A stretch of 63,654 nt of DNA, counting the filler, from Octopus bimaculoides (lineage: Eukaryota), in the NCBI RefSeq assembly GCF_001194135.2. It is 4 parts of 4 records of this genome, joined end to end, with 100 filler letters (N's around TTAATTAATTAA, not from the genome) between each part and the next. Parts side by side here need not be neighbours in the genome. Positions count along the whole stretch, not along the records: positions 29,386 to 43,857 come from NC_069000.1; 3 more parts are not named here. One strand, given 5' to 3'. Positions 29,648 through 43,857 of the stretch are shown piece by piece. The translations under genes were made by a program, and so were the position numbers. The notes under the pieces were generated by a model, which was given only the letters and a program-made list of their open reading frames with translations, searched no databases and was not told the DNA's origin. Position 1 is the first letter of the stretch; the number at the start of each line of letters is the position of its first letter.

Positions 29648-29984
29648 AGGCGATAAAATAAATACCAGCTGGGCACTGGGGTCGATGTCATCGACCCTCC
29701 CCCTCCCATCAAAATTTCAGGTCTTGTGCCTGTAGTAGAAAAGATTTATACCAAAGTACAAATTCCTGTATTTAAGTAAATTTAAAATATGTTTAATTTA
29801 AGGCGGTGAGCTGGCAGAACCGTTAGCACGCCGGGCAGTGTTCAAATTCCGCCGAGGTCAACTTTGACTTTCGTCATATCGGGGTCGATAAATTAAGTAC
29901 CAGTTGTGTACTTAGATCGATCGATCTAATCGATTGGTCCCCTCCCCCAAAATTTCGGGCCTTGTGCCTAGAGTAGAAAAGAAT
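29648..29984 (+). mobile_element. Two SINE family C copies (partial 29648-29746; internally deleted 29800-29984)
   Basis: ggcggtgagctggcagaaccgttagc head and ggggtcgataaattaagtaccag core. Confidence 0.8.
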
Positions 29985-30295
29985 ATATGTTTAATTTAGA
30001 ATGTGCTAACCAAGGTGGCCACCCTTGGCTCGGAAAAATCACTACTCTAGAAGGGCTTTGAAACGAAAGATTCGAGAAAATCCGTGTTATACCTGCATAA
30101 TTTTTCTAAGAGGTATTAGCGAAATGAAATGGTCTGCTCTTAAACCCAGAATCGAAAGCAGATCTTGGCCTTTATTTCAATCGATACTCCTTAGAGAACT
30201 CATTTCACGCCAAATAAAGTTCTTGTGTGAGTACATGGTACAAGCAATTAAGGGATGGTGATCTTGATCAACATATTTTAAATTAAACAACTATC

Positions 30296-31192
30296 GATTT
30301 CAAATTTTGGCACAAGGTCAGTAATTTCGGGGGCGGGGTTAAGTCGTCGATTACATCGACCCCAGTACTCAACTGGTACTTATTTTATCGACCCCCCCCC
30401 CGAAAGGATGAACGTTAAATTTGAACTTGGTGAAATTTTGAACTCAGAACATAAAGATTGGCGAAATGCCACTAAGTATTTTACACGGTGTGTTAACGAT
30501 TCTGTCAGCTCGCTGTCTTAATAATTCTTTCTACTGGAAGCACAAGGCCTCAAATTTGGGGGAAGAGATTAAGTCGATTACATCGATCCCAGTGTGTAAC
30601 TGGTACTTAATTTATCGACTCCGAAAGGATGAAAGGCAAAGTCAACCTCGGCGGAATTTGAACTCAGAACGTAAAGACAGAAGAAACACCGCTAAGCATT
30701 TCGCCCGGCGTGTTAACGATTCTTATTTCTTTACTGCCTACAAGGGGCTACACACAGAGGGGACAAACAAGGACAGAGACAGATTATGTCGATTACATCG
30801 ATCCCAGTGCGTAATTGGTACTTACTTAATCGACCCCGAAAGAATGAAAGGCAAAGTCAACCTCGGCAGAATTTGAACACAGAACGTAACGGCAGACGAA
30901 ATACCGCTAAGCATTTCGCCCGGCGTGCTAACGTTTCTGCCAGCTCGCCGCATTCGCTGTCGTAATAACTAGTAACCCTTTCTGCTAAAGGGAGAAGGCC
31001 TGAAATTTGCGGGGAAGAAACTAGTCGCATACACCGACCCCAATACTTCACTGGTACTTTAATTATCGACCTCCGAAAGGATGGAAGGCAAAGTTGGCCT
31101 CTGCAGAACTGGAACTCAGTGACAATTAGTCTGTTCTTTACGTTCTAAGCATTTTCCCCGGCGTGTTAATACTTCCATCAGCTCACAGCCTT
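30296..31192 (-). mobile_element. Four head-to-tail SINE family C copies
   Basis: Units at about 30296-30518, 30521-30722, 30723-30950 and 30975-31192, each with the ctggtactta..atcgacc..gaaaggatgaaaggcaaagtc core. Confidence 0.85.
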
Positions 31193-32400: not shown

Positions 32401-33203
32401 TCTTTACGCGAAGAACGACTTTGCATTTCATCCCTTGAGAGTTCAAGTACTGACTGAATCCGAGAANNNNNNNNNNNNNNNNNNNNNNNNNNNNNNNNNN
32501 NNNNNNNNNNNNNNNNNNNNNNNNNNNNNNNNNNNNNNNNNNNNNNNNNNNNNNNNNNNNNNNNNNNNNNNNNNNNNNNNNNNNNNNNNNNNNNNNNNNN
32601 NNNNNNNNNNNNNNNNNNNNNNNNNNNNNNNNNNNNNNNNNNNNNNNNNNNNNNNNNNNNNNNNNNNNNNNNNNNNNNNNNNNNNNNNNNNNNNNNNNNN
32701 NNNNNNNNNNNNNNNNNNNNNNNNNNNNNNNNNNNNNNNNNNNNNNNNNNNNNNNNNNNNNNNNNNNNNNNNNNNNNNNNNNNNNNNNNNNNNNNNNNNN
32801 NNNNNNNNNNNNNNNNNNNNNNNNNNNNNNNNNNNNNNNNNNNNNNNNNNNNNNNNNNNNNNNNNNNNNNNNNNNNNNNNNNNNNNNNNNNNNNNNNNNN
32901 NNNNNNNNNNNNNNNNNNNNNNNNNNNNNNNNNNNNNNNNNNNNNNNNNNNNNNNNNNNNNNNNNNNNNNNNNNNNNNNNNNNNNNNNNNNNNNNNNNNN
33001 NNNNNNNNNNNNNNNNNNNNNNNNNNNNNNNNNNNNNNNNNNNNNNNNNNNNNNNNNNNNNNNNNNNNNNNNNNNNNNNNNNNNNNNNNNNNNNNNNNNN
33101 NNNNNNNNNNNNNNNNNNNNNNNNNNNNNNNNNNNNNNNNNNNNNNNNNNNNNNNNNNNNNNNNNNNNNNNNNNNNNNNNNNNNNNNNNNNNNNNNNNNN
33201 NNN

Positions 33204-33358
33204 TCGACCCAGTGTTCAACTGGTACCTTTGTTATCGACTCTGAAATGTTGAACAGTAAAGTCGACCTTGGTGGCGTTTGAGCTCAGAATGTAAAAAGCC
33301 GAAAGAAATGCTGCTAGGCATTTTGTCCGACAGCTAACGACTCCGCCAGATCGCCACC
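33204..33358 (-). mobile_element. SINE family C
   Basis: Reverse complement of the family C head and core. Confidence 0.7.
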
Positions 33359-34149
33359 CTCTTCTTCCGTATAAGAAGCTGAGGAAAATATTAGTTGTTG
33401 ATAAAATATTTCCTTCGCGAGTTTAGAATATCGGACCAACAAAAAAAAATGTCGGTCAGATACTCTAAGCTCACGATGAAAAAATTCTTGAGTTCAAATT
33501 TAAGATAAATAAATAAAAAGATATTGCAAACAGTTTGCAGTAATTTAGTCAATAGAAATTGGCAAATTAAAGCCTGCCTATTTGTTTCTACCAAACGGCC
33601 AAGAACAACTCGTCTATGTTTGGCCTTAATCATTGGAGGCATGCGCCGAACCACTGCACATTATCATACTGCTTGCTCCTCAGCTCTTTACCAGACTGAA
33701 TATTCAACAGTTAGCTTGTTTAAGCAAATACACAGCACAACAGATAAGATTTACAGTTACCGGCATTTTGAAATACTCTTCCAGGTTCGTTGGCTACGAC
33801 ACCATTCTCTTTTCTTGTTTTTTCAGCTCTACAAACTTATCAGATTTAGTTCCAGTATTTATTTCTTCTTTATTTGTAACTTTATTTTCCCCATGTTAAT
33901 CATTTTTTAAAAATCCTGTCCCTCGCCTTTTTTTCTCCACTTCGTTGGTTGTAATTTAAAATTCCAAAATCCATTTCTACTTTCCAAGTTTGGGATTGTG
34001 TCTTTAATTTTAAAATATAGAAATTTCAATTCGATCTTCGGTGCTACTTTAGCATGATGTCTACCGCAGTATCCGTAATCTACGCTAATAATAAATCATT
34101 ATTCAACATCATTCAACTCGTTTATAATCATCCAGTATAAAGTCCCTGT

Positions 34150-34450
34150 AGTTGAGGTAGACTGCACGTCCAGGTAAACCTCATGTTAAAATGCAAATGG
34201 CCAGGTGGAGCATACGCTGCGTCTTTTCTCAATATTTTCCCGGCGAATGTGATCAAGGTGCGACAACAAAAAGGATTGAATTTAATAAGCACAAGTAATA
34301 AATTCATACCATTAAGGGCCACCGAACCCATTGAGATCATTGCACAGTGTAGACCAGGGATGCTGTGGTATAGTGCACATTGACGTGGCATCCGATCTTC
34401 TTGCCAATTTGAAATAATATTTCTAAAAGTTTCGGCAACACACACACACT
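34150..34450 (-). mobile_element. Possible Gypsy-type integrase relic
   Basis: Frameshifted minus-strand pieces (QEDRMP..IPQHPWSTL..FGGP/LNGMNLLLV) resemble the PxxPWxxxHIDFAGP integrase motif; highly decayed. Confidence 0.3.
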
Positions 34451-34521
34451 TTGTGTGTCTCATAATCCATGGACACACGTTTTATTTGTAACTTACAAGA
34501 GTCCTACCATTATAGGACACA

Positions 34522-34611
34522 CGGCGAAGCTAAAAAATACGTACACCACCCGTTTTCGGCGGTTAGGGTTACGCCGAAAACGGGTAGTGTGCGTATTCTT
34601 TACCTCCGTCG
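34522..34611. repeat. 90-bp foldback (mini-MITE-like) with a GTTAGGGTTA loop
   Basis: 30-nt arms 34532-34561 and 34572-34601 with 3 mismatches, extending loosely to about 40 nt. Flanked by the direct repeat gacaca. Confidence 0.75.
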
Positions 34612-34701
34612 GACACATTGCATATACAATTTCAATACGAATAAATATTTAAAATAATTTTTAAAACCCTGTTTGGATATTATTTTCCACATTTTTTTTC
34701 A

Positions 34702-35080
34702 CAGCCATGGCTATATGGTGAAGAAGCTTGATTTGCAAACGCATGGCTTCGAGTTCAGTCCCCCTGTGTGGCACATTGGCCCCGTGTCTTCTATTATGGC
34801 CCCGGGCCGACCAGTTCCTTACGAGTCAATTTGGTAATCGAAAACTGCGTGGAAGCCCATCTTGTATATAATGTGCTTGTATATATGTTGCTTGTCCCCA
34901 CCACTGATTATCAAACGGTGTTGGATTGTTTACGTCCTCCTAACGTAGCAGTACGAAAAAAAAAAGAACGATGGAATAAGTACCAGACTTTAAAATAAAT
35001 ACTGGGGTAGATTTGTTCGACTAAACCCTTCAAGGCGGTGTCCCAGTATGGCCGTAGTCCAATGAGTGAAACCAGTAAAA
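34702..35080 (+). mobile_element. SINE family D, full length (old)
   Basis: Head and tail align with 56019-56415. Confidence 0.75.
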
Positions 35081-35489
35081 ACATTACATATTCTCAGTAT
35101 TAAATAATGATGTGCGTAAAGGGTAATTTATGATTAACTTACCTTGTGGTATTTAGCTAACGTACCTTAATCTTTTGAGTTCAAATCCCACCAGAATAGA
35201 TGAAATAAATAACTGACCAGTGTTTGAAATTCGATTTAACCTTTGATAGTCTCTCTCTCGCATTGCGAGTTCGAATCGTAACGCAGTCGAGTTTGCTTTT
35301 CGTTTTTTCCGAGTGAGATGAGGGGCGGTAAAATGCAAAAATCCCTTACTAGGGAGTTTCGGTTTAATCAACCGTACCCTCTCCCGCTCTTGCTTTTCTG
35401 GCCTTGAGCTTATGTTAGAAATCATACGTTCAAATTCCACCGTTGTCAATTGCAAGGGTCGATAATATAAAGCACCAATCAAGTGGTTG

Positions 35490-35691
35490 GTTAGTCCAGG
35501 GCCGGGGTCTCTGGTGTATATATTCCCCGGTCCGTCGCAAGATCACTCATTTTTATCAGCTGAATGGACAGGAGCAACGTGAAATGAGGAGTTTTGCTCA
35601 AAAACACAATGCATCGCCCGGTTCAAGAATCGAAACCACAATCTTACGATCATGTGTTCAACACACTAACCACTGAGCCATGCGCCTCCAC
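35490..35691 (-). mobile_element. tRNA-derived CORE-type SINE, family B
   Basis: Reverse complement of 2391-2590. Confidence 0.75.
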
Positions 35692-36064
35692 GCCAGTCAC
35701 GTAGTGAAATCAATTTAATCGGCTAACTCGTCTCTTCAAATTTCTCACCTTGTATCTTTGGATTGTAATTAAGTTCGGAAACATGGTCATCATGGTTTCT
35801 ACAGTTCCGTCATAAATCAAACCGAATTTGGGTCGGAAGTAAAAGACCAACCAAATGGGTTTTTTCACAATTCTTCACAATGAATTTGTGCACGAGTGAA
35901 TGCAAATGTTCAGTCATCGATGCTCCATTATAAGAAGCATTTGGCGTCTAGTTCAAGAGAATTTAATCGGGTTTATGAAGGACAGACATTGACGCTCTTT
36001 AGCACCAAGTCAGTGCTGATTGAGTAGATCTATAGTCAAGGACCTTCCAGCTGTGACCATCCTG

Positions 36065-36360
36065 TTTATTACCTCCGCCTTGGCGAAGGCATTGTTTTCA
36101 GCCGTGTTTGTTTGTTTGTCCGCGGACAAGATATCTCAAGAACCGCTGGATGGATTCAGATGTTTGGTCTTGTAGCTGGAACGAACTGATTAGATTTGAG
36201 ATCGATCCGGTACGAAACAAGGATTCTGGATTATTTTTCCTGTTTTTTTTTTGTTTTTTTTTTTACTTAATTTTTGAGAGGGGTAGTGTTCATTTTTAGT
36301 ATTCTCGTTTGTGAGAGCAGTCGAGTTTATTTCAAATATCCTCATTTTAAAAATCATCTC
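36065..36360 (+). mobile_element. Helentron/DINE-like non-autonomous element
   Basis: T-rich start ttattacctccgccttggcgaaggc (subterminal hairpin), (GTTT)n microsatellite, then caagatatctcaagaaccgctggatggatt, as in HINE-type elements (from memory). Confidence 0.5.
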
Positions 36361-37654
36361 AGAATGCAAGATGGCACTTTTCTGCCGGTTGACAATGCAA
36401 ATCTCAATTCCAATATCCTTCGGCCTCTTAGCTGTTTGGTTGCTGTGTCATGAGCGCCACGCATAGTATATCTAGGGATTACCTTACATATCTCACTTCG
36501 TTTCTTTTATCACGGGTGTCTGATTTGATGGCAATGTCACTGTTATTTCTAGCAGATCGTGTGACCACGTAGAGGTCCCTTCATTGGCTCAGAGCATGAT
36601 GATGGCGGTGGGGATAAGATTATAAACGAAAACAGCAGAGTGCGTCAGTTTCTGTTCTCATAGACTCGGTTTATTACCAATTCTTTTCTCGGTCACATTT
36701 TCAACTCTTCAAATGTTTATATACACAACGGTGGTACCCCAGCATGACCGCAGCTTCAAAGCTGAAACAATTTAAAGAATTAAATTTTTTTTTAAATAAT
36801 CGTTTAACTCAGACTTAGTAGAGAAGTTTAAAACCCGGCTGGGTAAAATACCTTGGTGTTTATAAGTCCTTTAAGTTCTGAATTCAAATTCTGCGATCAT
36901 CTTTGTTTTTCTCTCACTTTTCTGGCTCATGTCGATACGATAAAAATAAAAAAAGACTCCTCAAAGGAGATGTTAGCTGTAGACCCAATGGGACGTTTCA
37001 AATATGTTCATATAGATAGAATCAATGTTTTCAACCAAGTAGACTGTTTTTGTTTAGACTGTCCGAGATCAACTTTGAACCAGACGATCAATGAAATTCC
37101 AGCACCGACTTCATTATTCAATGCGTCCTTCATTTTATTTTATAATGGCAATGTTTGATTGCAGAGATCTTTGGTTGCTATTTCTAATAGTTACTATTTC
37201 TCACTGCGAAGAGGATCCTTCGTTGGCTCAGAAAACAGTTTGTTAGTCCGTAGCTTAGCTATAGTTGGTACCACCCGCGACATCCTTTGATTTGATCGAT
37301 CCCCTCATCGGTTCTCTAAGATTATACTGGTTTATACAGCAAATCCAAAAGGCTGCTCCATAAAAGCATCTCCCTTGGCGGCACTCAACCCACACATAGA
37401 TACACTTTCTACGCTTCTATTATTAGCGTTGATGTAGGACACAAATTCTATTCTAAAAAAATGATGGGATGGCAGCTGATGATCTATGTCTCATGTACAG
37501 ATAGATGGTTCATTACTTTATGCAGCAGCATTGTAATAAAAAAAAAAAAAGGCTTTTATTTTTTTTTTAGCTAGGAGTGGTAGCTTTAAGTCCTGTGGTG
37601 GGCGGTAATAAGAAAGCAGTTCAAGATTATTAAACGACTACTTGAAAATACATA

Positions 37655-37850
37655 AGGCAGTGAGCTGGCAGAATCGTTAGCGCGTCGGACAAAATGCTTG
37701 TCATTTCTTCGAGCTCCTTACTTCTGACTTCAAATCAACTTGGCCGAAGTCAGCTTGGCCCTTTATCCCTTTGTGATCGATAAAGTATGTGCCTGTGAAA
37801 TAGTGCGGATCGATACAGTAGACTTGTCTCATTCCTTCAAAATTACTGAC
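37655..37850 (+). mobile_element. SINE family C (old copy)
   Basis: aaggcagtgagctggcagaatcgttagcgcgtcggacaaaatgctt head; decayed core. Confidence 0.7.
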
Positions 37851-38005
37851 CTTAAATTCTGCAACCGATCGGCTTCCCGTTCAGGGAAAGTTTTGTGTCG
37901 GGTAACTGATTCATACGGCTTAAGGCTCACGAATAAAAGCATAATGTAACTACACACGTGCTGTTGACGATTCTTTTTTTCCTTCTTTGGACTTTCCTCC
38001 TTTTT

Positions 38006-38041
38006 CTTTCCAATGAAGAGCCATGCTCGAAACGTCAAAAG
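38006..38041 (+). ncRNA. Degenerate hammerhead-like motif in a solo Penelope tail fragment
   Basis: cttt CCAATGA a-gagc-cat-gctc GAAACGTC aaaag. Same layout as 13300-13335, with two core mismatches. Confidence 0.3.
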
Positions 38042-38849
38042 CTCTCGCTTTTTCAATGAACGTCAAATTCATACATTCCTTGTGCACGTCTTCTTGTTAT
38101 TAATATTTTAATGTTCGTTTATTTGATTTGACTGTGAGTGTGTGTAGCTAAGTAACTGAAAAGAGGTGGGGGAAATGTCTACGATACTTGCAAAGAATCT
38201 CAGAATGAGGAAAATAGAAAAAAAATTCCCAGCTAAATTGGGTGAAATGGAAAAAGTGTTAGTCCAAAATTTCAAACTTGATAGAAGATACACACTAGAA
38301 GTGTAGCAAGGAAAAAGGAAAAACGATTTATCCAGGTGTAGAGGTGAAAAAACGCAACATTTTCTTTGGCTTATAATGTCTATTAATTTGGGGACGCCAA
38401 AAGTAACTCCGACCCCCAGAACTGAGAAGCTTTGTTATACCACTTAGAAGAAATTTAAATGCATTTCTGGGAGTAAAACAATTAATTATTCCACACGAAT
38501 CTTTTCAATGAAAATTGTCATAAATCTTTCCCTCGTTTTTTGTCTTTTTCGTTCTCGCTACAATTTCCTGAGAGAGTAAAAATCCAATTCATTCAAAGAG
38601 CAAATATAAGAAAAAAAGACAGAAATATACTTATTTATAGGCGTTGTATTGTGTCTTATGCAAATATAGTAATTTATTCAACCAATCACGTTGTTCTATT
38701 TTATTTGAATAATAATAATATATAAATATGTTTGTTATTTAGCTTTATAGATATATGTAAATATTTTGGCTTTAGAAGAAGCTAATTTTTTTTATTACCC
38801 ACAAGGGGCCACGAAGAGGGGACAAACAAAACATGTGGGGGACATATAA

Positions 38850-39038
38850 CGTATGAAAAATGAATGACTGCAGCCATGCTGGAGCACCACCTTTAGTTGA
38901 GTTATTTTTTTGTAAGCCTAGTACTTATTCAATTAGTTTCTTTTGCCGAACTGCTAAGTTACGGGGATGTAAACACACAAGCATTGGTTGTCAGGCAATT
39001 TTGGTGGGGACAAACACACACACAGACATATACACACA

Positions 39039-39115
<77 letters not shown>

Positions 39116-39193
39116 TATATACAAATATATATATATATGTGTGTGTGTGTATGTATATATATATATACACATATATATGTGTGTGTGTGTATG

Positions 39194-39225
<32 letters not shown>

Positions 39226-39378
39226 CGATGGACTTCTTTCAGTTTCCATCTACCAAATCCACTCACAAGGCTTTAGTCGGCCCGAGGCTATAGTAGAAGA
39301 TACTTGCCCAAGGTGTCGCACAGTTGGACTTAACCCGGAACCGTGTGGTTGGTAAACAAGCTACTTACCACACAGTCA
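38850..39378 (-). mobile_element. SINE family D with an expanded internal (TA)/(TG) microsatellite
   Basis: Reverse complement of 56019-56415, with about 215 nt of internal microsatellite. Confidence 0.85.
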
Positions 39379-39390
39379 CAATTTTTTAAA

Positions 39391-39670
39391 AGTCTGGTAC
39401 TTATCTTGTTGGTCCTCTTTTTTATTTTTTTCAAACTGTTTACAGAGATACAGACAAACCAAAATTAAGTTGTCAAGTGATGAGGAAGAACACACACACA
39501 CACACACATTTGACAGGTTTCTACACAGTTTCCATCTACTAAATTCACTCAGAAGGCATTAGTCAGCCCAGGGCTATACTAGAAGGCACTTACTTGTCCA
39601 AAGTGCTGTGTAGTAGGACTGAACCCAAAACCATATGATTGTAAAGCAAGCTTGTTGACCTCACAGCAAT
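39391..39670 (-). mobile_element. SINE family D (older copy, tandem to the previous one)
   Basis: cagtttccatctactaaattcactcagaaggc..ggactgaaccc. Confidence 0.7.
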
Positions 39671-39811
39671 GTCTAAATGGATTTCACCTTGGAACCCGTA
39701 TTTCTATATGATGGAGTGAGATACCCTAAGACAATTGAAGGTCAAATTGACCAAAATGATGTGTAGAAACAAGGAAGTGTTATTCTTTACAATCATAGTA
39801 AGTCTTCAGCA

Positions 39812-40270
39812 TTATCATCATCATTATTCCAACGTCCATGTTGGACAGTTTGATAGGATCTGACGTACCTAAAGACTGCATCATGCTTCAGAGTCTCTGC
39901 CTTGGCAGGGTTTCAATGGTTGGATGCACTTCTTAATGCCAACCACTTTATAGTATGTGCTGGTTGTTTTTTTTTTCTTTTTTCTTTGTGTGTGTAACCA
40001 GCACTAGTGAGGTTACCATTTGCTTATGAGACTAAGAAACCCAAGTAAAGTGGGGAGTATTTATGTTAGGAGAATATGGAGTAGAGAAAGGGTATAAGAG
40101 GGGTTATTATGAGAGAAAAGGGCCAGGGAAGAACAGGTTTCTTGCTGTAGTGTAACTATATGAATACAGACGTTTTAGAAGAGAAGGTGATGGTGGGGGG
40201 GTGAAAAGGGATAAAAGCGTTGTTATCAGGTGTCAGGGTGGATCTTCAAGGTACCAGGTGAATATGAGTA
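39812..40270 (-). mobile_element. Retroposon 3'-tail repeat ((GAT)n-ended, RTE-like)
   Basis: (CAT)n followed by aacgtcc..ggatgcacttcttaatgccaaccacttt; the same family as 60515-61000. Confidence 0.5.
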
Positions 40271-40289
40271 AAGAGAATCATCAGTTTAG

Positions 40290-40343
40290 TATTTTAATAG
40301 TTTTCAGTCATTTTTTTACTTTCTTTTTTTTTTTTTCTTCCAG
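40290..40343 (+). promoter_or_regulatory. 3' splice site (branch-like TTAAT, long pyrimidine tract, CAG) ending 20 nt upstream of the AFF-like ATG
   Basis: ttttaatagttttcagtcatttttttactttcttttttttttttttcttccag|ttgtattttatatcaagatcATG. Confidence 0.6.
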
Positions 40344-40363
40344 TTGTATTTTATATCAAGATC

Positions 40364-43300
40364 ATGGCAAATAGTGAAGAATCTATGAAAACCATTCCAG
40401 TATTTGGTTCTCCGTGTCGTATATTTGAAATGAATGAGGATCCGATAAACCAAAAGTGTAAAAGAATTCTTGGAAACTATGAACTTATGCAGAACTTTAT
40501 TTCTGATTTTATATACATCTCCTCACAAGAACGTCCTGAAATTCTACACAATTTTCCAGATCGCAGGCTTGATGTTTCATACAGAGGAATCGGCCCTTTC
40601 CCCAAAAATATGCAACCAGATGTTAAGGTTCCCCCGNNNNNNNNNNNNNNNNNNNNNNNNNNNNNNNNNNNNNNNNNNNNNNNNNNNNNNNNNNNNNNNN
40701 NNNNNNNNNNNNNNNNNNNNNNNNNNNNNNNNNNNNNNNNNNNNNNNNNNNNNNNNNNNNNNNNNNNNNNNNNNNNNNNNNNNNNNNNNNNNNNNNNNNN
40801 NNNNNNNNNNNNNNNNNNNNNNNNNNNNNNNNNNNNNNNNNNNNNNNNNNNNNNNNNNNNNNNNNNNNNNNNNNNNNNNNNNNNNNNNNNNNNNNNNNNN
40901 NNNNNNNNNNNNNNNNNNNNNNNNNNNNNNNNNNNNNNNNNNNNNNNNNNNNNNNNNNNNNNNNCATAGGCCTACGCAATCATCTCTTTTACCAACATCT
41001 GGTCAAACAATGACCCTTCAAAAAAATGGAGTCAGTAACGATATGTATTGTAAACCAGAACAACAGGAGATAAGAGATGGTCAAACTCTGATTACTGACA
41101 TGAGAAAGGATTCATCGAAAGACAGAAATGTCGAAGAAATATTTAGGCTGACAATTGTAAAATCAGCTCTTGAGCCTCCCCTCTCCCCAATTTCTTCACC
41201 CATAAATGAATGGAAAAATTCTAAGCAACTGGATCAAAGTTTGTCAAGGCCAATTAGCAATAAACCAATCATTTCTCTACAGACTATATTCTCTGAAATT
41301 ATTACCAATTTAAAGCCACTTAGTCCTATTAAAAGTCCAAAATTTAAAAACACTGAAAATAATGATTTGGAACCTTGTACAGAAAATGTTGAACTCAATA
41401 CCTGGTCTTCTCCTGTCGATGACCTTAACATAAAACAGAAATCTGAAAATATGAAAGAATGGAAAAAAAGACATATTTTGGAACCGCAATATTCACAATT
41501 CTCTGTTGTAAAGCAGAGTTCAAGACGAGCTTATGTATCTGATAATAAAAATTCTTCAGTTGTTTCTGTCCACACATCTCCAACTGCACCAATGTATGAT
41601 AGCGAGATTAAATATGGAATTGAAGAAATCAATAAAAAATTGTATTACCCTAGAAGTGATTCCTATAGTGTCAAAATAACGACTAAAACAGAAAAATATC
41701 TTCCAAGTTTGGATAATATAGCCAACTGTTCATTGCCGAAAGAAAGAAAAGATTTGTCACAAGGTTTTAACTACATAAAAAGTGACAAATCTGTTGTAAA
41801 CGAAACGAAAAATGACTTAACAAATAGGATGGAATATAACTTTAACATGTCAAAGGAACAAAAGTGTTCAATGACAGTGCATCAGGTTGTACCACATGTT
41901 AATGCTGTGGATGAAAATAAATACATGAAACAGACGAAATACACTTACATAAACGAGATACAAGATGAAAAGAGTATTAAGATCATTGCCAAAGAAAGTC
42001 CTTTAAAAGAACCGAGCTACAAATATCAATACAAAACTGAACACCAGTCGCCTTCCTGTGAAATACCTTTTGCAAATACATCTGAAATATCTCCGCATAA
42101 AATTACATTTTCTAGTGAAAATGTCTTGGAGAATAAATTTTCAAAAGACGATCATCTGACACAGATTGTTAATACACAGGAATTTGTAAAACCTTATTCA
42201 ACTGGAACTTATCAAAAAAGCTTGAGGCCCTGTCTCAATATAGAAAAAGATATATCAGCTGCTCTGATTTTTTCTTCTCCTAAATACAAAGTCAGCCCAT
42301 TTGACATCTTCAATAACAGATGCTCACTTCTGAGACTCCCTATTTATTCTCTTACACAAAGGGAAAAGAAATTAGTCATCAAAATTCCATTGACATTATT
42401 GGATAGGAAACTAAAAATAAAAATGAAGTCTAAATTTGATGAGAATAATAAAAAGAGAATGCAGCGTTCATATTTTACTAGAAAAAAGTGGAATATATGC
42501 ATCATAGTGAAAATAAAAACTGCTTTACTTCATAAAATACCTTATTGTTGTATTCAGAAAGACATAAAAGCTTTAAGGTCAATGCCATATCCTCAGAAGC
42601 ACAGAAGAGTAAAGAGTGAGGGCCTATTCAAGACAAATACACACCTGTTAGGATCTGGGTTATTAGAAACTCACTGCTACAATGATTCAAGTTCTTACAA
42701 TGCAAGGGCCAATTATTTAAAAGACCAAGCTAAAATAATGCAACCAGCAGCTCAAAAGTTTTTGAAATTAATGTCTGCAATGTGGTATATTATGTGTGGC
42801 CATAGAATGGAAGAGGAACGAGTATCCCATAATTCTGTAATAACATTTTTTCAGACTACTTTTGAGTTTTTGGGTAAAATTGGCCATTTTAATGATTCCA
42901 GGATGGAAGCATTGAAACTTTTACTCCAAACTGCAGCAGCTCAAAAGATTTACCTCTTAAGAAATTTCAAAATGAAACAGCTCAAAATTGATTTAACTGA
43001 AGAATCAAAGACAGTGTTTGGTAAGCATTTTCCTTCCCAGCAGTTCGGTAATTATATTCGGCAACATTCTAATTTATCACAGAAGGAAAATTACCATTCA
43101 ATAATTGTCTCAAGACACTGGCTTTCTTTGAATAATGATTACGTTGAAATACTAGAACTTCTTGTACAAAGTAACCAATTTTGGATGGAATCACAAAATT
43201 TGATGCAAGAAAACAAAGAATTCTTTACACTTTTTGGAAATAAATGGCAAACACTTTCATTAAATGAACATATTCCAACAGTGGTTGACTTTGTCAAAGA

Positions 43301-43385
43301 CTGTTTGGAATTATTGCAACCAAAAGAATTGAAAATTTACACAGAATTCCAAAAGCATATTCAATTTGAAAATGATTTTCTCTAA
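40364..43385 (+). CDS. AFF4-like: AF4/FMR2 (AFF/lilliputian) family transcription elongation scaffold, intronless paralog, about 1000 aa
   Basis: ATG in strong context (atcATGG). N-terminal PVFGSPCRIFEMNEDPINQKCKRILGNYELMQNFISD matches AFF4 [57 protein letters not shown] matches the AFF [22 protein letters not shown] box. LVIKIPLTLL matches the AF9/ENL-binding LIVKIDLNLL. The C-terminal YNARANYLKDQA..IMCGHRMEE..FWMESQNLMQENKEFF..VVDFVKDCLELL matches the CHD. There are 91 open codons before the gap (40637-40964) and 806 after it. The gap length is an estimate, so the one-base frame offset is not evidence of a frameshift. Confidence 0.9.
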
Positions 43386-43753
43386 TGGAATCGGTTCATC
43401 ATTCGACCTGTGCTCCATTCTCACACTAAATTTACATCACTTATAAAAGAACTTCCATAAATACAGATGTACTGTTTAAAATTTGTTCTTTTCTATTTTT
43501 TGGAACTCTTCAAATGATATAGAATTTAAAGGCATCGACCAACCAAAACCCAAGTAAATAAGTATATAGTTAATGATATTTAAATTTAGAACAAAACAGG
43601 GAAGTGAAGTATTATATTCATTTTAAACTGTGGGGCCCAAAAATATTATCAGCTGTTATTTATATCTTTTCCGCTTTGAGTTCGACAGTGAAAAACAAAT
43701 TATTAACTTTTATAAGTACCCCTAGAAAAATATAAATACTTTTTCGATGTTTT

Positions 43754-43759
43754 ATTAAA
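43754..43759 (+). promoter_or_regulatory. Possible polyadenylation signal (ATTAAA) of the AFF-like gene
   Basis: ATTAAA about 370 nt after the stop, followed by GT- and T-rich sequence. Such hexamers are common by chance in AT-rich DNA. Confidence 0.25.
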
Positions 43760-43822
43760 TTGTGGTAACACCGAATAATTTGCAATAACACTTTCCTGAA
43801 GTGTGTATACACTTTTTTTTTC

Positions 43823-43857
<35 letters not shown>

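What the first reader, a model, noticed from the sequence alone, without database searches (positions are those of the whole stretch)
40364..43385. Intronless, divergent AF4/FMR2 (AFF/lilli) paralog: candidate retrogene for an alternative super elongation complex scaffold
Seen: 91 plus 806 uninterrupted codons on either side of one gap. Four AFF modules occur in canonical order: CyclinT box 40397-40507, ELL box 41130-41201, AF9/ENL motif 42372-42410 and CHD 42696-43340. No intron interrupts any sequenced part, and a 2.4-kb open frame in DNA this AT-rich implies selection. Known: vertebrate AFF1-4 have about 20 exons, Drosophila lilli is also spliced, and the invertebrates I know of have a single AFF that bridges P-TEFb, ELL and AF9/ENL. 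Inference: this is an old retrocopy kept as a second, fast-evolving scaffold, possibly tissue- or germline-restricted like the testis-specific paralogs of general transcription factors in Drosophila. The ORF track hides it because the N-terminus lies in another frame across the gap.
Basis: partly seen in the sequence, partly recalled or inferred. Interest (0 to 1): 0.8.

Follow-up and report, generated by a model that had tools for sequence, protein, structure and literature searches.

The report
Single-exon divergent AFF scaffold gene, octopus
This is a real, selectively maintained octopus gene for a very divergent member of the AF4/FMR2 (AFF) family of transcription-elongation scaffolds, encoded unusually in one uninterrupted coding exon.

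Summary
There are 91 open codons (40364-40636) and 806 open codons (40965-43385) on either side of the N run. The Octopus vulgaris orthologue (CAI9737402.1, 990 aa, one uninterrupted 2973-nt CDS) shows the gap hides about 92 codons (276 nt, not 328), so the two pieces are in frame.

- **Family:** the C-terminal homology domain (CHD) is solidly AFF: Pfam above cut-off, hhalign 96.8%, and an AF2 model that matches only the three AFF4 CHD crystal structures.
- **Partner motifs:** the P-TEFb, ELL and AF9/ENL motifs are present in the canonical order, at motif-level support only. The ELL and AF9/ENL motifs each occur twice.
- **Selection:** dN/dS is about 0.33 (CHD 0.14-0.25) across three octopods.
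- **Age:** a more distant set of single-ORF relatives also exists.
- **Derived structure:** the canonical mollusc AFF (Haliotis) spans about 145 kb, so the one-exon CDS is derived.
- **Not strictly intronless:** a conserved splice acceptor 14-20 nt before the ATG implies a 5'UTR intron.
- **Untested:** "paralogue", "retrogene" and "germline-restricted". My searches for a canonical octopus AFF failed technically.

Verdict: a new variant of a known family, of moderate interest.

The parts
40226..40257 (+). Putative end of a 5'UTR exon, with candidate donors AAG|GTACCA (40250|40251) and CAG|GTGAAT (40257|40258)
   Evidence: This block is conserved in all three octopods. L002 has the consensus AAG|GTGAGT at the aligned place. 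Inferred only, because no RNA evidence was available.
40258..40343 (+). Putative short 5'UTR intron ending in a polypyrimidine tract plus CAG (AG at 40342-40343)
   Evidence: The acceptor is conserved 14-20 nt before the ATG in the window, L001, L002, L004, L008 and L009. L008 has an in-frame TAA between the acceptor and the ATG, which argues for UTR rather than coding sequence.
40364..40636 (+). CDS part 1: codons 1-91, from the ATG start
   Evidence: It is 96% identical to O. vulgaris residues 1-91.
40397..40507 (+). P-TEFb (cyclin T) binding-type box, PVFGSPCRIF...LGNYELMQNFISD
   Evidence: Pfam AF-4 E 0.01, below the cut-off. It aligns to the AFF4 peptide of PDB 4OR5. hhalign to Haliotis AFF 35-63 gives P 1e-4. 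dN/dS is 0.17-0.24.
40637..40964 (.). Assembly gap of 328 N. The true content is about 276 nt, corresponding to codons 92-183.
   Evidence: Coordinates of the flanking matches in O. vulgaris and the protein alignment.
40965..43385 (+). CDS part 2: 806 codons plus the stop TAA at 43383-43385
   Evidence: It is 89% identical to O. vulgaris residues 184-990.
41130..41201 (+).
   Evidence: It resembles the AFF1 peptide [20 protein letters not shown] quoted in PMC5290273. It is conserved in the P0003 clade as IKEMRLPPLISPISSP. It was not statistically significant on its own.
41274..41339 (+). ELLBow-like motif 2, SLQTIFSEIITNLKPLSPIKSP
   Evidence: It is the top hhalign hit to Haliotis AFF 375-399, at P 0.11. 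That Haliotis stretch in turn matches the AFF4 ELLBow chain of PDB 5JW9 at E 0.63. It is conserved in the P0003 clade.
42369..42416 (+).
   Evidence: It fits the published consensus LxVxIxLxxV/L (PMC8344022) with I in place of V. The chance of one such match in a shuffled protein is 0.008. A low-confidence AF2 model places a beta-strand here.
42495..42542 (+). AF9/ENL AHD-binding-type motif B, ICIIVKIKTALLHKIP
   Evidence: It is the top hhalign hit to Haliotis AFF 920-936 (AIMVEINLSLLDHIPSS), at P 0.025. It is 9/15 identical to the AFF4 peptide PLIVKIDLNLLTRIP. It is conserved in the P0003 clade as LLIKLDTKLLSSIP.
42693..43319 (+). AFF C-terminal homology domain (CHD), lacking the Ser/Thr/Pro-rich insert of canonical CHDs
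   Evidence: Pfam PF18876 scores 36.9 bits against a cut-off of 24. hhalign to the Haliotis CHD gives 96.8%, E 2e-10, over 213 columns. The AF2 model has pLDDT 84 and pTM 0.80. The only significant Foldseek hits are 6R80, 6K7P and 6KN5, all AFF4 CHD, with TM 0.60-0.72. The absence of the insert is seen.
43320..43382 (+). C-terminal extension PKELKIYTEFQKHIQFENDFL, beyond the point where canonical CHDs end
   Evidence: Alignment A6. The PKEL part is conserved in both cephalopod-type clades. The AF2 model has low confidence here.
43386..43775 (+). Probable 3'UTR, with ATTAAA at 43754
   Evidence: It is 89-95% identical to O. vulgaris and alignable to L002. The poly(A) signal scan is. No A-rich tract follows it.

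Best explanation
The locus is a functional, lineage-restricted member of the AFF (AF4/FMR2/Lilli) family. Its whole 990-codon-class reading frame lies in one exon, preceded by a short 5'UTR intron.

**What the protein looks like**
- It is a mostly disordered scaffold.
- Its N-terminal helix box is of the type that docks cyclin T/P-TEFb.
- It has two tandem ELLBow-type motifs of the type that docks the ELL occludin domain.
- It has two beta-strand motifs of the LxVxIxLxxL type that docks the AF9/ENL AHD.
- It has a C-terminal homology domain of the type that dimerises AFF proteins.
- It has lost the serine-rich regions of canonical AFFs and the low-complexity insert in the CHD.

**Most likely origin (inferred, not shown)**
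A spliced AFF mRNA was reverse-transcribed and inserted in an early cephalopod. The copy then captured an upstream exon and promoter, and has since been kept as a second, faster-evolving scaffold for a super-elongation-type complex alongside a canonical multi-exon AFF.

**Shown here:** family membership, the single-exon CDS, purifying selection, age, and the derived gene structure.

**Inferred:** partner binding, retroposition, and the existence of the parent gene.

**How the confidence splits:** about 0.9 that this is a functional AFF-family gene with a single-exon CDS, and about 0.55 for the full statement including a retro-derived second copy beside a canonical parent.
For: **Family membership**
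- ORF and coordinates.
- CHD: Pfam above the cut-off; hhalign 96.8% to the Haliotis AFF CHD; an AF2 model with pLDDT 84 whose only significant PDB matches are the three AFF4 CHD structures.
- Collinear best local matches of each sub-profile to Haliotis AFF: 35-63, 375-399, 920-936 and 1231-1490.
- The AHD consensus taken from PMC8344022 is met. The relaxed AHD pattern occurs twice, at shuffle P 0.0024.

**Selection**
- dN/dS is 0.33 in all three octopod pairs and 0.14-0.25 in the CHD.
- All indels are in frame and there are no stop codons.

**Gene structure**
- The CDS is one uninterrupted ORF in O. vulgaris, in a second octopod and in the distant relatives L004 and L009.
- The Haliotis canonical AFF spans about 145 kb and carries both Pfam AF-4 and AFF4_CHD.
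- The acceptor just before the ATG is conserved.

**Signs of a non-essential extra copy**
- Divergence is fast: about 41% CHD identity between the two clades.
- One assembly holds a second truncated copy and a frameshifted copy.

**A possible parental lineage**
- A canonical-type CHD transcript of unknown organism (P0008) is the nearest non-member, at 61.6 bits against 36.7 for Haliotis. This is what a cephalopod parental lineage would look like.
Against: - No canonical octopus AFF was found. The searches meant to find one returned only P0008 and a fragment, and did not even return the Haliotis protein used as query. They are therefore technical failures, not negatives.
- The octopod profile reached Haliotis AFF but no annotated cephalopod canonical AFF at E<=1e-3.
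- P0008 stands alone as its own 50%-identity representative. This argues mildly against its coming from a cephalopod with an annotated genome.
- Canonical CHDs also diverge fast: Haliotis against P0008 is about 30%. Fast evolution therefore does not by itself mark a paralogue.
- No poly(A) remnant or target-site duplication was seen.
- The ELL motif matches are individually non-significant.
- No expression or binding data could be consulted.
Confidence: 0.55

Rival explanations
1. This is the only AFF gene of coleoid cephalopods. Either a retrocopy replaced the multi-exon parent (retrogene replacement, as described for amphioxus SYCP1 in PMC5803294), or the ancestral gene lost all its coding introns in place. 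On this reading it is the general super-elongation-complex scaffold, not a specialised extra one.
For: - No cephalopod canonical AFF surfaced in the exhaustive HMMER search, although Haliotis AFF did.
- All four partner modules are retained under purifying selection.
- AFF CHDs are fast-evolving even among canonical genes, so 41% identity between clades is not decisive.
- The concept has a precedent.
Against: - The Haliotis hit was borderline (36.7 bits, E 1e-4), so a cephalopod canonical AFF could simply have fallen below the threshold.
- Replacement is much rarer than addition. This rests on established knowledge, not on a test here.
- The loss of the Ser-rich regions, the extra truncated copy and the frameshifted copy in one assembly fit a less constrained gene better.
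- P0008 may be the cephalopod canonical gene.
Confidence: 0.33
2. The ORF is only the large last exon of a longer multi-exon gene. Further coding exons would lie upstream and splice into the acceptor at 40343.
For: - The acceptor is conserved.
- The distance from acceptor to ATG is 20, 14, 14 and 17 nt, always 2 mod 3.
- That stretch is stop-free in the octopods, L004 and L009.
- Canonical AFFs have about 30 residues before the cyclin T box, against 11 here.
Against: - L008 has an in-frame TAA between the acceptor and the ATG.
- The residues this stretch would encode are not conserved between clades.
- The ATG, its context and the following residues are conserved, and the O. vulgaris annotation starts there.
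- Even if this reading were true, all four modules would still lie in one exon.
Confidence: 0.08
3. It is a decaying processed pseudogene whose frame is open by chance or because the copy is young.
For: The CDS has no introns. The base composition is AT-rich. Nucleotide identity in the flanks (85-94%) is close to that in the CDS (about 93%).
Against: - The chance of 806 open codons is about 5e-29.
- The frame is open in at least three octopods separated by dS 0.15-0.32.
- dN/dS is 0.33 overall and 0.14-0.25 in the CHD, and every indel is in frame.
- Relatives that are far more divergent also have intact ORFs.
Confidence: 0.02

Closest known systems
Vertebrate AFF4/AFF1 (super elongation complex scaffolds)
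   Same: - The modules come in the same order: a P-TEFb-binding N-terminal box (aligns to the AFF4 peptide of 4OR5), ELLBow-type motif, LxVxIxLxxL AHD-binding motif, and CHD.
- The CHD has the same fold as 6R80, 6K7P and 6KN5.
- Both are largely disordered scaffolds.
   Different: - CHD identity to AFF4 is about 16-18%.
- There is no Ser-rich domain: 9.8% Ser overall and at most 10 Ser in any 50 aa.
- There is no low-complexity insert in the CHD.
- The ELL-type and AHD-type motifs are duplicated.
- There is a C-terminal extension.
Canonical mollusc AFF (Haliotis rufescens AF4/FMR2 family member 4-like, XP_046363129.2)
   Same: - The four regions match collinearly.
- Neither protein has the PxAxVxP motif.
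   Different: - Haliotis is 1493 aa and 17.8% Ser, and hits both Pfam AF-4 and AFF4_CHD.
- Its gene spans about 145 kb.
- The octopus protein is in the 990-aa class, shares about 24% CHD identity, and has an N-terminal Pfam hit below the cut-off.
Drosophila Lilli / C. elegans AFFL proteins (invertebrate AFFs)
   Same: They are divergent invertebrate members of the same family and are thought to scaffold elongation factors. This rests on my own knowledge and was not tested here.
   Different: They were not compared here. They are not known to be single-exon or to carry duplicated partner motifs (my own knowledge).
Functional retrogenes, including retrogene replacement (e.g. amphioxus SYCP1, PMC5803294)
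   Same: A single-exon CDS where relatives are multi-exon. A 5'UTR intron or exon of the kind retrogenes often acquire. Long-term purifying selection.
   Different: No parent gene was identified. No poly(A) tail remnant or target-site duplication was found. A different chromosomal location from a parent was not shown.

Membership tests
AFF (AF4/FMR2) family | C-terminal homology domain (Pfam PF18876), an all-helical TPR-like fold | tested here: met
   - Pfam: 36.9 bits against a cut-off of 24; 37.6 and 42.1 bits in the orthologues.
- hhalign to the Haliotis CHD: 96.8%, E 2e-10.
- AF2 model: pLDDT 84.
- Foldseek: the top three hits are the AFF4 CHD structures at E about 1e-7, and the next hit is at E 0.12.
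AFF (AF4/FMR2) family | N-terminal homology region with the cyclin T1/P-TEFb-binding box (Pfam PF05110) | tested here: inconclusive
   - Pfam AF-4 scores 15.6 bits, below the cut-off of 26.9 (E 0.01), and is not reported for full-length P0001.
- The box does align to the AFF4 chain of 4OR5 (E 0.42).
- It also aligns to Haliotis 35-63 (P 1e-4, 43% identity).
AFF (AF4/FMR2) family | ELL-binding ELLBow motif between the N-terminal box and the AHD-binding motif | tested here: inconclusive
   - Two motif-level matches lie in the right place and are conserved across clades.
- hhalign P is 0.11.
- phmmer against the PDB found nothing.
- The link to 5JW9 runs only through Haliotis, at E 0.63.
AFF (AF4/FMR2) family | AF9/ENL AHD-binding motif LxVxIxLxxV/L | tested here: met
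   - LVIKIPLTLL fits the consensus with I in place of V, at shuffle P 0.008.
- A second, relaxed copy IIVKIKTALL is the best match to the Haliotis motif (P 0.025).
- Only the sequence pattern was tested. Binding was not.
AFF (AF4/FMR2) family | Serine-rich (pSER) transactivation region | tested here: not met
   The octopus protein has 9.8% Ser and at most 10 Ser in any 50 residues. Haliotis has 17.8% and 26. This region is a common feature of the family, not a domain that defines it.
AFF (AF4/FMR2) family | Physical assembly of P-TEFb, ELL and AF9/ENL | not testable with these tools
   No multimer prediction or interaction data were available.
Retrogene (processed gene copy) | Lacks the introns of its multi-exon relatives throughout the CDS | tested here: met
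   The CDS is uninterrupted in O. vulgaris (2973 nt) and in L002, L004 and L009. The Haliotis AFF gene spans about 145 kb. Individual intron positions were not mapped.
Retrogene (processed gene copy) | An intron-containing parent gene elsewhere in the same genome | not tested
   The searches failed to retrieve even the query's own source protein. No tool here searches octopus genomes.
Retrogene (processed gene copy) | Poly(A) tract remnant and target-site duplications | tested here: not met
   No A-rich tract follows the 3'UTR in the window, L001 or L002. This is expected to have eroded at this age, so it carries little weight.

The most novel reading that the evidence does not exclude
Coleoid cephalopods carry a retro-derived, compact AFF scaffold. 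It has shed the serine-rich regions, and it has doubled both its ELL-docking and its AF9/ENL-docking motifs. It would therefore assemble an elongation complex with a different stoichiometry from the canonical super elongation complex. It would serve either as a tissue-restricted second complex or, more radically, as the replacement for a lost canonical AFF.
Probability: 0.3. Interest if true: 0.6.

Novelty: new variant of a known kind. Interest (0 to 1): 0.42.

Why it matters
AFF proteins are the central scaffolds of the super elongation complex, and animals outside vertebrates are usually treated as having one.
- An old, selectively maintained, single-exon AFF with duplicated partner-docking motifs would be a natural experiment in how a disordered scaffold can be rebuilt while keeping its short linear motifs.
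- It would also be a clean case of either retrogene addition or retrogene replacement for a core transcription factor in cephalopods.
- No paper in the searchable library links AF4/FMR2 with octopus, cephalopods or molluscs.
- Practically, the gene was retrieved from only one annotated genome in the protein collection, O. vulgaris, where it is called a "hypothetical predicted protein". In this window's assembly it is broken by a gap.

Tried and rejected
1. **Finding a canonical octopus AFF.** I ran the search for homologous proteins with Haliotis plus P0008 CHD profiles, first with low-complexity segments and then without. It returned only P0008 and a 112-aa fragment, and not even Haliotis itself.
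2. **Short motifs against the PDB.** phmmer with the octopus ELL and AF9 regions gave only chance hits. The Haliotis AF9 region also gave none.
3. **Literature.** There were no papers for the run or assembly accessions. There were none for AF4/FMR2 with cephalopod, octopus or mollusc. An octopus gonad transcriptome supplement has no AFF entry. The first search was swamped by "Lilliput"-type matches.
4. **Full-length AF2 model of the O. vulgaris orthologue.** Mean pLDDT was 28. It is unusable except as a weak hint of helices and strands at the motifs.
5. **Identifying the organism of P0008 from GC3.** This was uninformative.
6. **Rfam on the whole piece.** Nothing was found.
7. **SIAH-type PxAxVxP degron.** It is absent here and in Haliotis, so it does not discriminate.
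8. **Pseudogene reading.** Rejected on dN/dS and on the conserved open frames.
9. **Haliotis gene look-up.** Isoform X2 is not on record. Isoform X1 worked.
Full report
**1. The observation**

The piece holds an ATG-initiated open frame of 91 codons (40364-40636), an N run (40637-40964, 328 N), and an open frame of 806 codons ending in TAA at 43383-43385.
- At the local base composition, 806 stop-free codons have a probability of about 5e-29.
- No other gap-free, stop-free stretch in the piece exceeds 152 codons.

**2. The gap**

A protein search found two close relatives:
- Octopus vulgaris CAI9737402.1 / A0AA36BPN1: 990 aa, 89% identical, named "hypothetical predicted protein" by its source.
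- A 979-aa protein from a Logan assembly, 79% identical.

The O. vulgaris gene is one uninterrupted 2973-nt CDS on chromosome OX597833.1. The Logan contig also carries one ORF.

The window is collinear with the O. vulgaris locus from 33212 to 43852. Window 40635 matches CDS position 272 and window 40969 matches position 554. The gap therefore stands for codons 92-183, or 276 nt.

With 276 rather than 328 bases the two pieces are in one frame. This explains why an ORF list shows them in different frames. Continuity is inferred from orthologues and was not read in this genome.

**3. What the protein is**

*The C-terminal homology domain (CHD).*
- It passes Pfam's curated cut-off for AFF4_CHD: 36.9 bits against 24, and 37.6 and 42.1 bits in the orthologues.
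- A profile of the cephalopod sequences aligns to the CHD of a canonical mollusc AFF (Haliotis rufescens AF4/FMR2 family member 4-like) over 213 columns, with hhalign probability 96.8% and E 2e-10.
- An AlphaFold2 model of window residues 42642-43382 is all-helical, with pLDDT 84 and pTM 0.80.
- Its only significant matches in the PDB are the three crystal structures of the human AFF4 CHD (E 1e-7 to 9e-7, TM 0.60-0.72). The next hit is at E 0.12.

*The N-terminal box (residues 12-48).*
- It scores below Pfam's AF-4 cut-off (15.6 bits, E 0.01).
- It aligns to the AFF4 peptide crystallised with P-TEFb in 4OR5.
- It aligns to Haliotis residues 35-63 (hhalign P 1e-4).

*The two short motifs.* I searched each sub-profile against the whole 1492-aa Haliotis protein.
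- The best local hits fell at Haliotis 375-399 (P 0.11) and 920-936 (P 0.025).
- These are collinear with the other two matches.
- Haliotis 368-407 in turn matches the AFF4 ELLBow chain of 5JW9, at E 0.63.
- The published AF9/ENL AHD-binding consensus is LxVxIxLxxV/L (PMC8344022). LVIKIPLTLL meets it, with a chance of 0.008 in composition-shuffled sequence.

Family membership is therefore firm through the CHD. The three partner motifs are supported by position, order, conservation and pattern, but only weakly by statistics.

**4.

- **Both short motifs occur twice.** Both copies are kept in the distant relatives.
  - ELLBow-type: 41130-41201 and 41274-41339.
  - AHD-binding-type: 42369-42416 and 42495-42542.
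  - The second copy is in each case the better match to the canonical mollusc protein.
- **The CHD lacks the Ser/Thr/Pro-rich insert** present in Haliotis and in P0008. It also carries a C-terminal extension.
- **Serine content is low:** 9.8% against 17.8% in Haliotis.

**5. Selection and age**

Nei-Gojobori dN/dS is 0.33 in all three octopod pairs (dS 0.15-0.32). It is 0.14-0.25 in the CHD and 0.17-0.24 in the N-terminal 91 codons. All indels are in frame.

An exhaustive HMMER search of 1.84 billion representatives gave only eight hits at E<=1e-3. Besides the octopods these were:
- A more divergent group (P0003-P0007), with about 41% CHD identity. Their organisms are not given by the tools. 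I take them to be other cephalopods, probably decapodiforms; this is an inference.
- P0008, a canonical-type CHD transcript of unknown organism.
- The Haliotis AFF, at E 1e-4.

The divergent group again has single ORFs. One assembly holds two loci:
- One is full-length but has one frameshift.
- The other is an intact 600-codon ORF lacking the roughly 440-residue middle.

**6. Gene structure**

The Haliotis canonical gene spans about 145 kb for 1493 residues and hits both Pfam AF-4 and AFF4_CHD. The one-exon CDS is therefore a derived state.

The gene is probably not strictly intronless. A polypyrimidine tract plus AG lies 14-20 nt before the ATG in the window, O. vulgaris, L002, L004, L008 and L009. 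In the octopods a conserved block with a donor-like site lies about 90 nt upstream.

In L008 a TAA lies in frame between the acceptor and the ATG. This favours a 5'UTR intron over an upstream coding exon.

No poly(A) remnant follows the conserved 3'UTR, which has ATTAAA at 43754.

**7. What could not be settled**

That needs a search of octopus genomes.
- None of the tools holds octopus genomes.
- My two attempts to pull a canonical cephalopod AFF out of the protein collection failed technically.

The indirect evidence points both ways.

| For a paralogue | For a sole orthologue |
|---|---|
| Fast evolution | No annotated cephalopod canonical AFF reached E<=1e-3, although Haliotis did |
| Loss of the Ser-rich regions | Canonical CHDs are themselves only about 30% identical between Haliotis and P0008 |
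| Extra, damaged or truncated copies in one assembly | Retrogene replacement has a precedent (PMC5803294) |
| P0008 is the nearest outsider | |

I put the paralogue reading at about 0.55-0.6 and the sole-AFF reading at about 0.33. Expression pattern and partner binding were not testable.

**8. Verdict**

- It is a new variant of a known family: a compact, single-coding-exon AFF with doubled docking motifs, apparently undescribed in the literature searched.
- It has already been auto-labelled as CHD-containing in UniRef.
- Interest is moderate.

Noticed in passing
window 41130-41201 and 41274-41339; 42369-42416 and 42495-42542: The ELLBow-type motif and the AF9/ENL-AHD-type motif are each present twice, and both copies are conserved in the distant P0003 clade. 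hhalign against the canonical Haliotis AFF picks the second copy each time.
   Followed up: partly
L008 6907-9956 and L009 10001-11803 (both from ENA assembly ERZ21867824): One assembly carries two loci of this gene. One is a full-length copy split by a single frameshift near 'FLKGSP'. The other is an intact 600-codon copy missing the roughly 440-residue middle. Their upstream sequences are alignable, which suggests a DNA-level duplication. L009 has reverse-transcriptase and endonuclease ORFs 0.6-6.4 kb upstream.
   Followed up: partly
L003 (Logan SRR25158134), 1-1101: This is an mRNA-like contig encoding a canonical-type AFF CHD. It has a poly-Ser run upstream and a Ser/Thr-rich insert. It is the closest non-member to the octopus gene, at 61.6 bits against 36.7 for Haliotis. 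The organism is unknown. It could be the cephalopod parental AFF.
   Followed up: partly
window 29800-29980 and 30292-31119: A short interspersed repeat is present in tandem or nested copies here. It has at least eight copies in the 23-kb O. vulgaris locus, at 73-94% identity. Rfam found no family match at gathering score.
   Followed up: no
window 32467-33203: A second assembly gap of 737 N lies in the piece. The ORFs listed across it (32435-33244 on + and 32443-33219 on -) are artefacts of the N run.
   Followed up: yes
window 39041-39225 and 43823-43857: These are long (AT)n microsatellites, with interspersed TG/CA-type dinucleotides around 38990-39280. They generate the spurious 'IYIYIY' ORFs on both strands. 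The region 38900-39500 is the only part of the upstream flank that does not align with O. vulgaris.
   Followed up: yes
window 40364-43385 (database observation): The word-index search returned only O. vulgaris and one Logan protein at 79% identity or more. No protein from the window's own genome was returned, and none from any NCBI RefSeq octopus annotation. The gene may therefore be unannotated in those genomes, here possibly because of the gap.
   Followed up: no
window 43320-43382: There is a C-terminal extension of about 21 residues (PKELKIYTEFQKHIQFENDFL) past the point where canonical CHDs end. 'LLQPKEL' is conserved in both clades. The tail is nearly invariant among the octopods but differs in the distant clade.
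   Followed up: no
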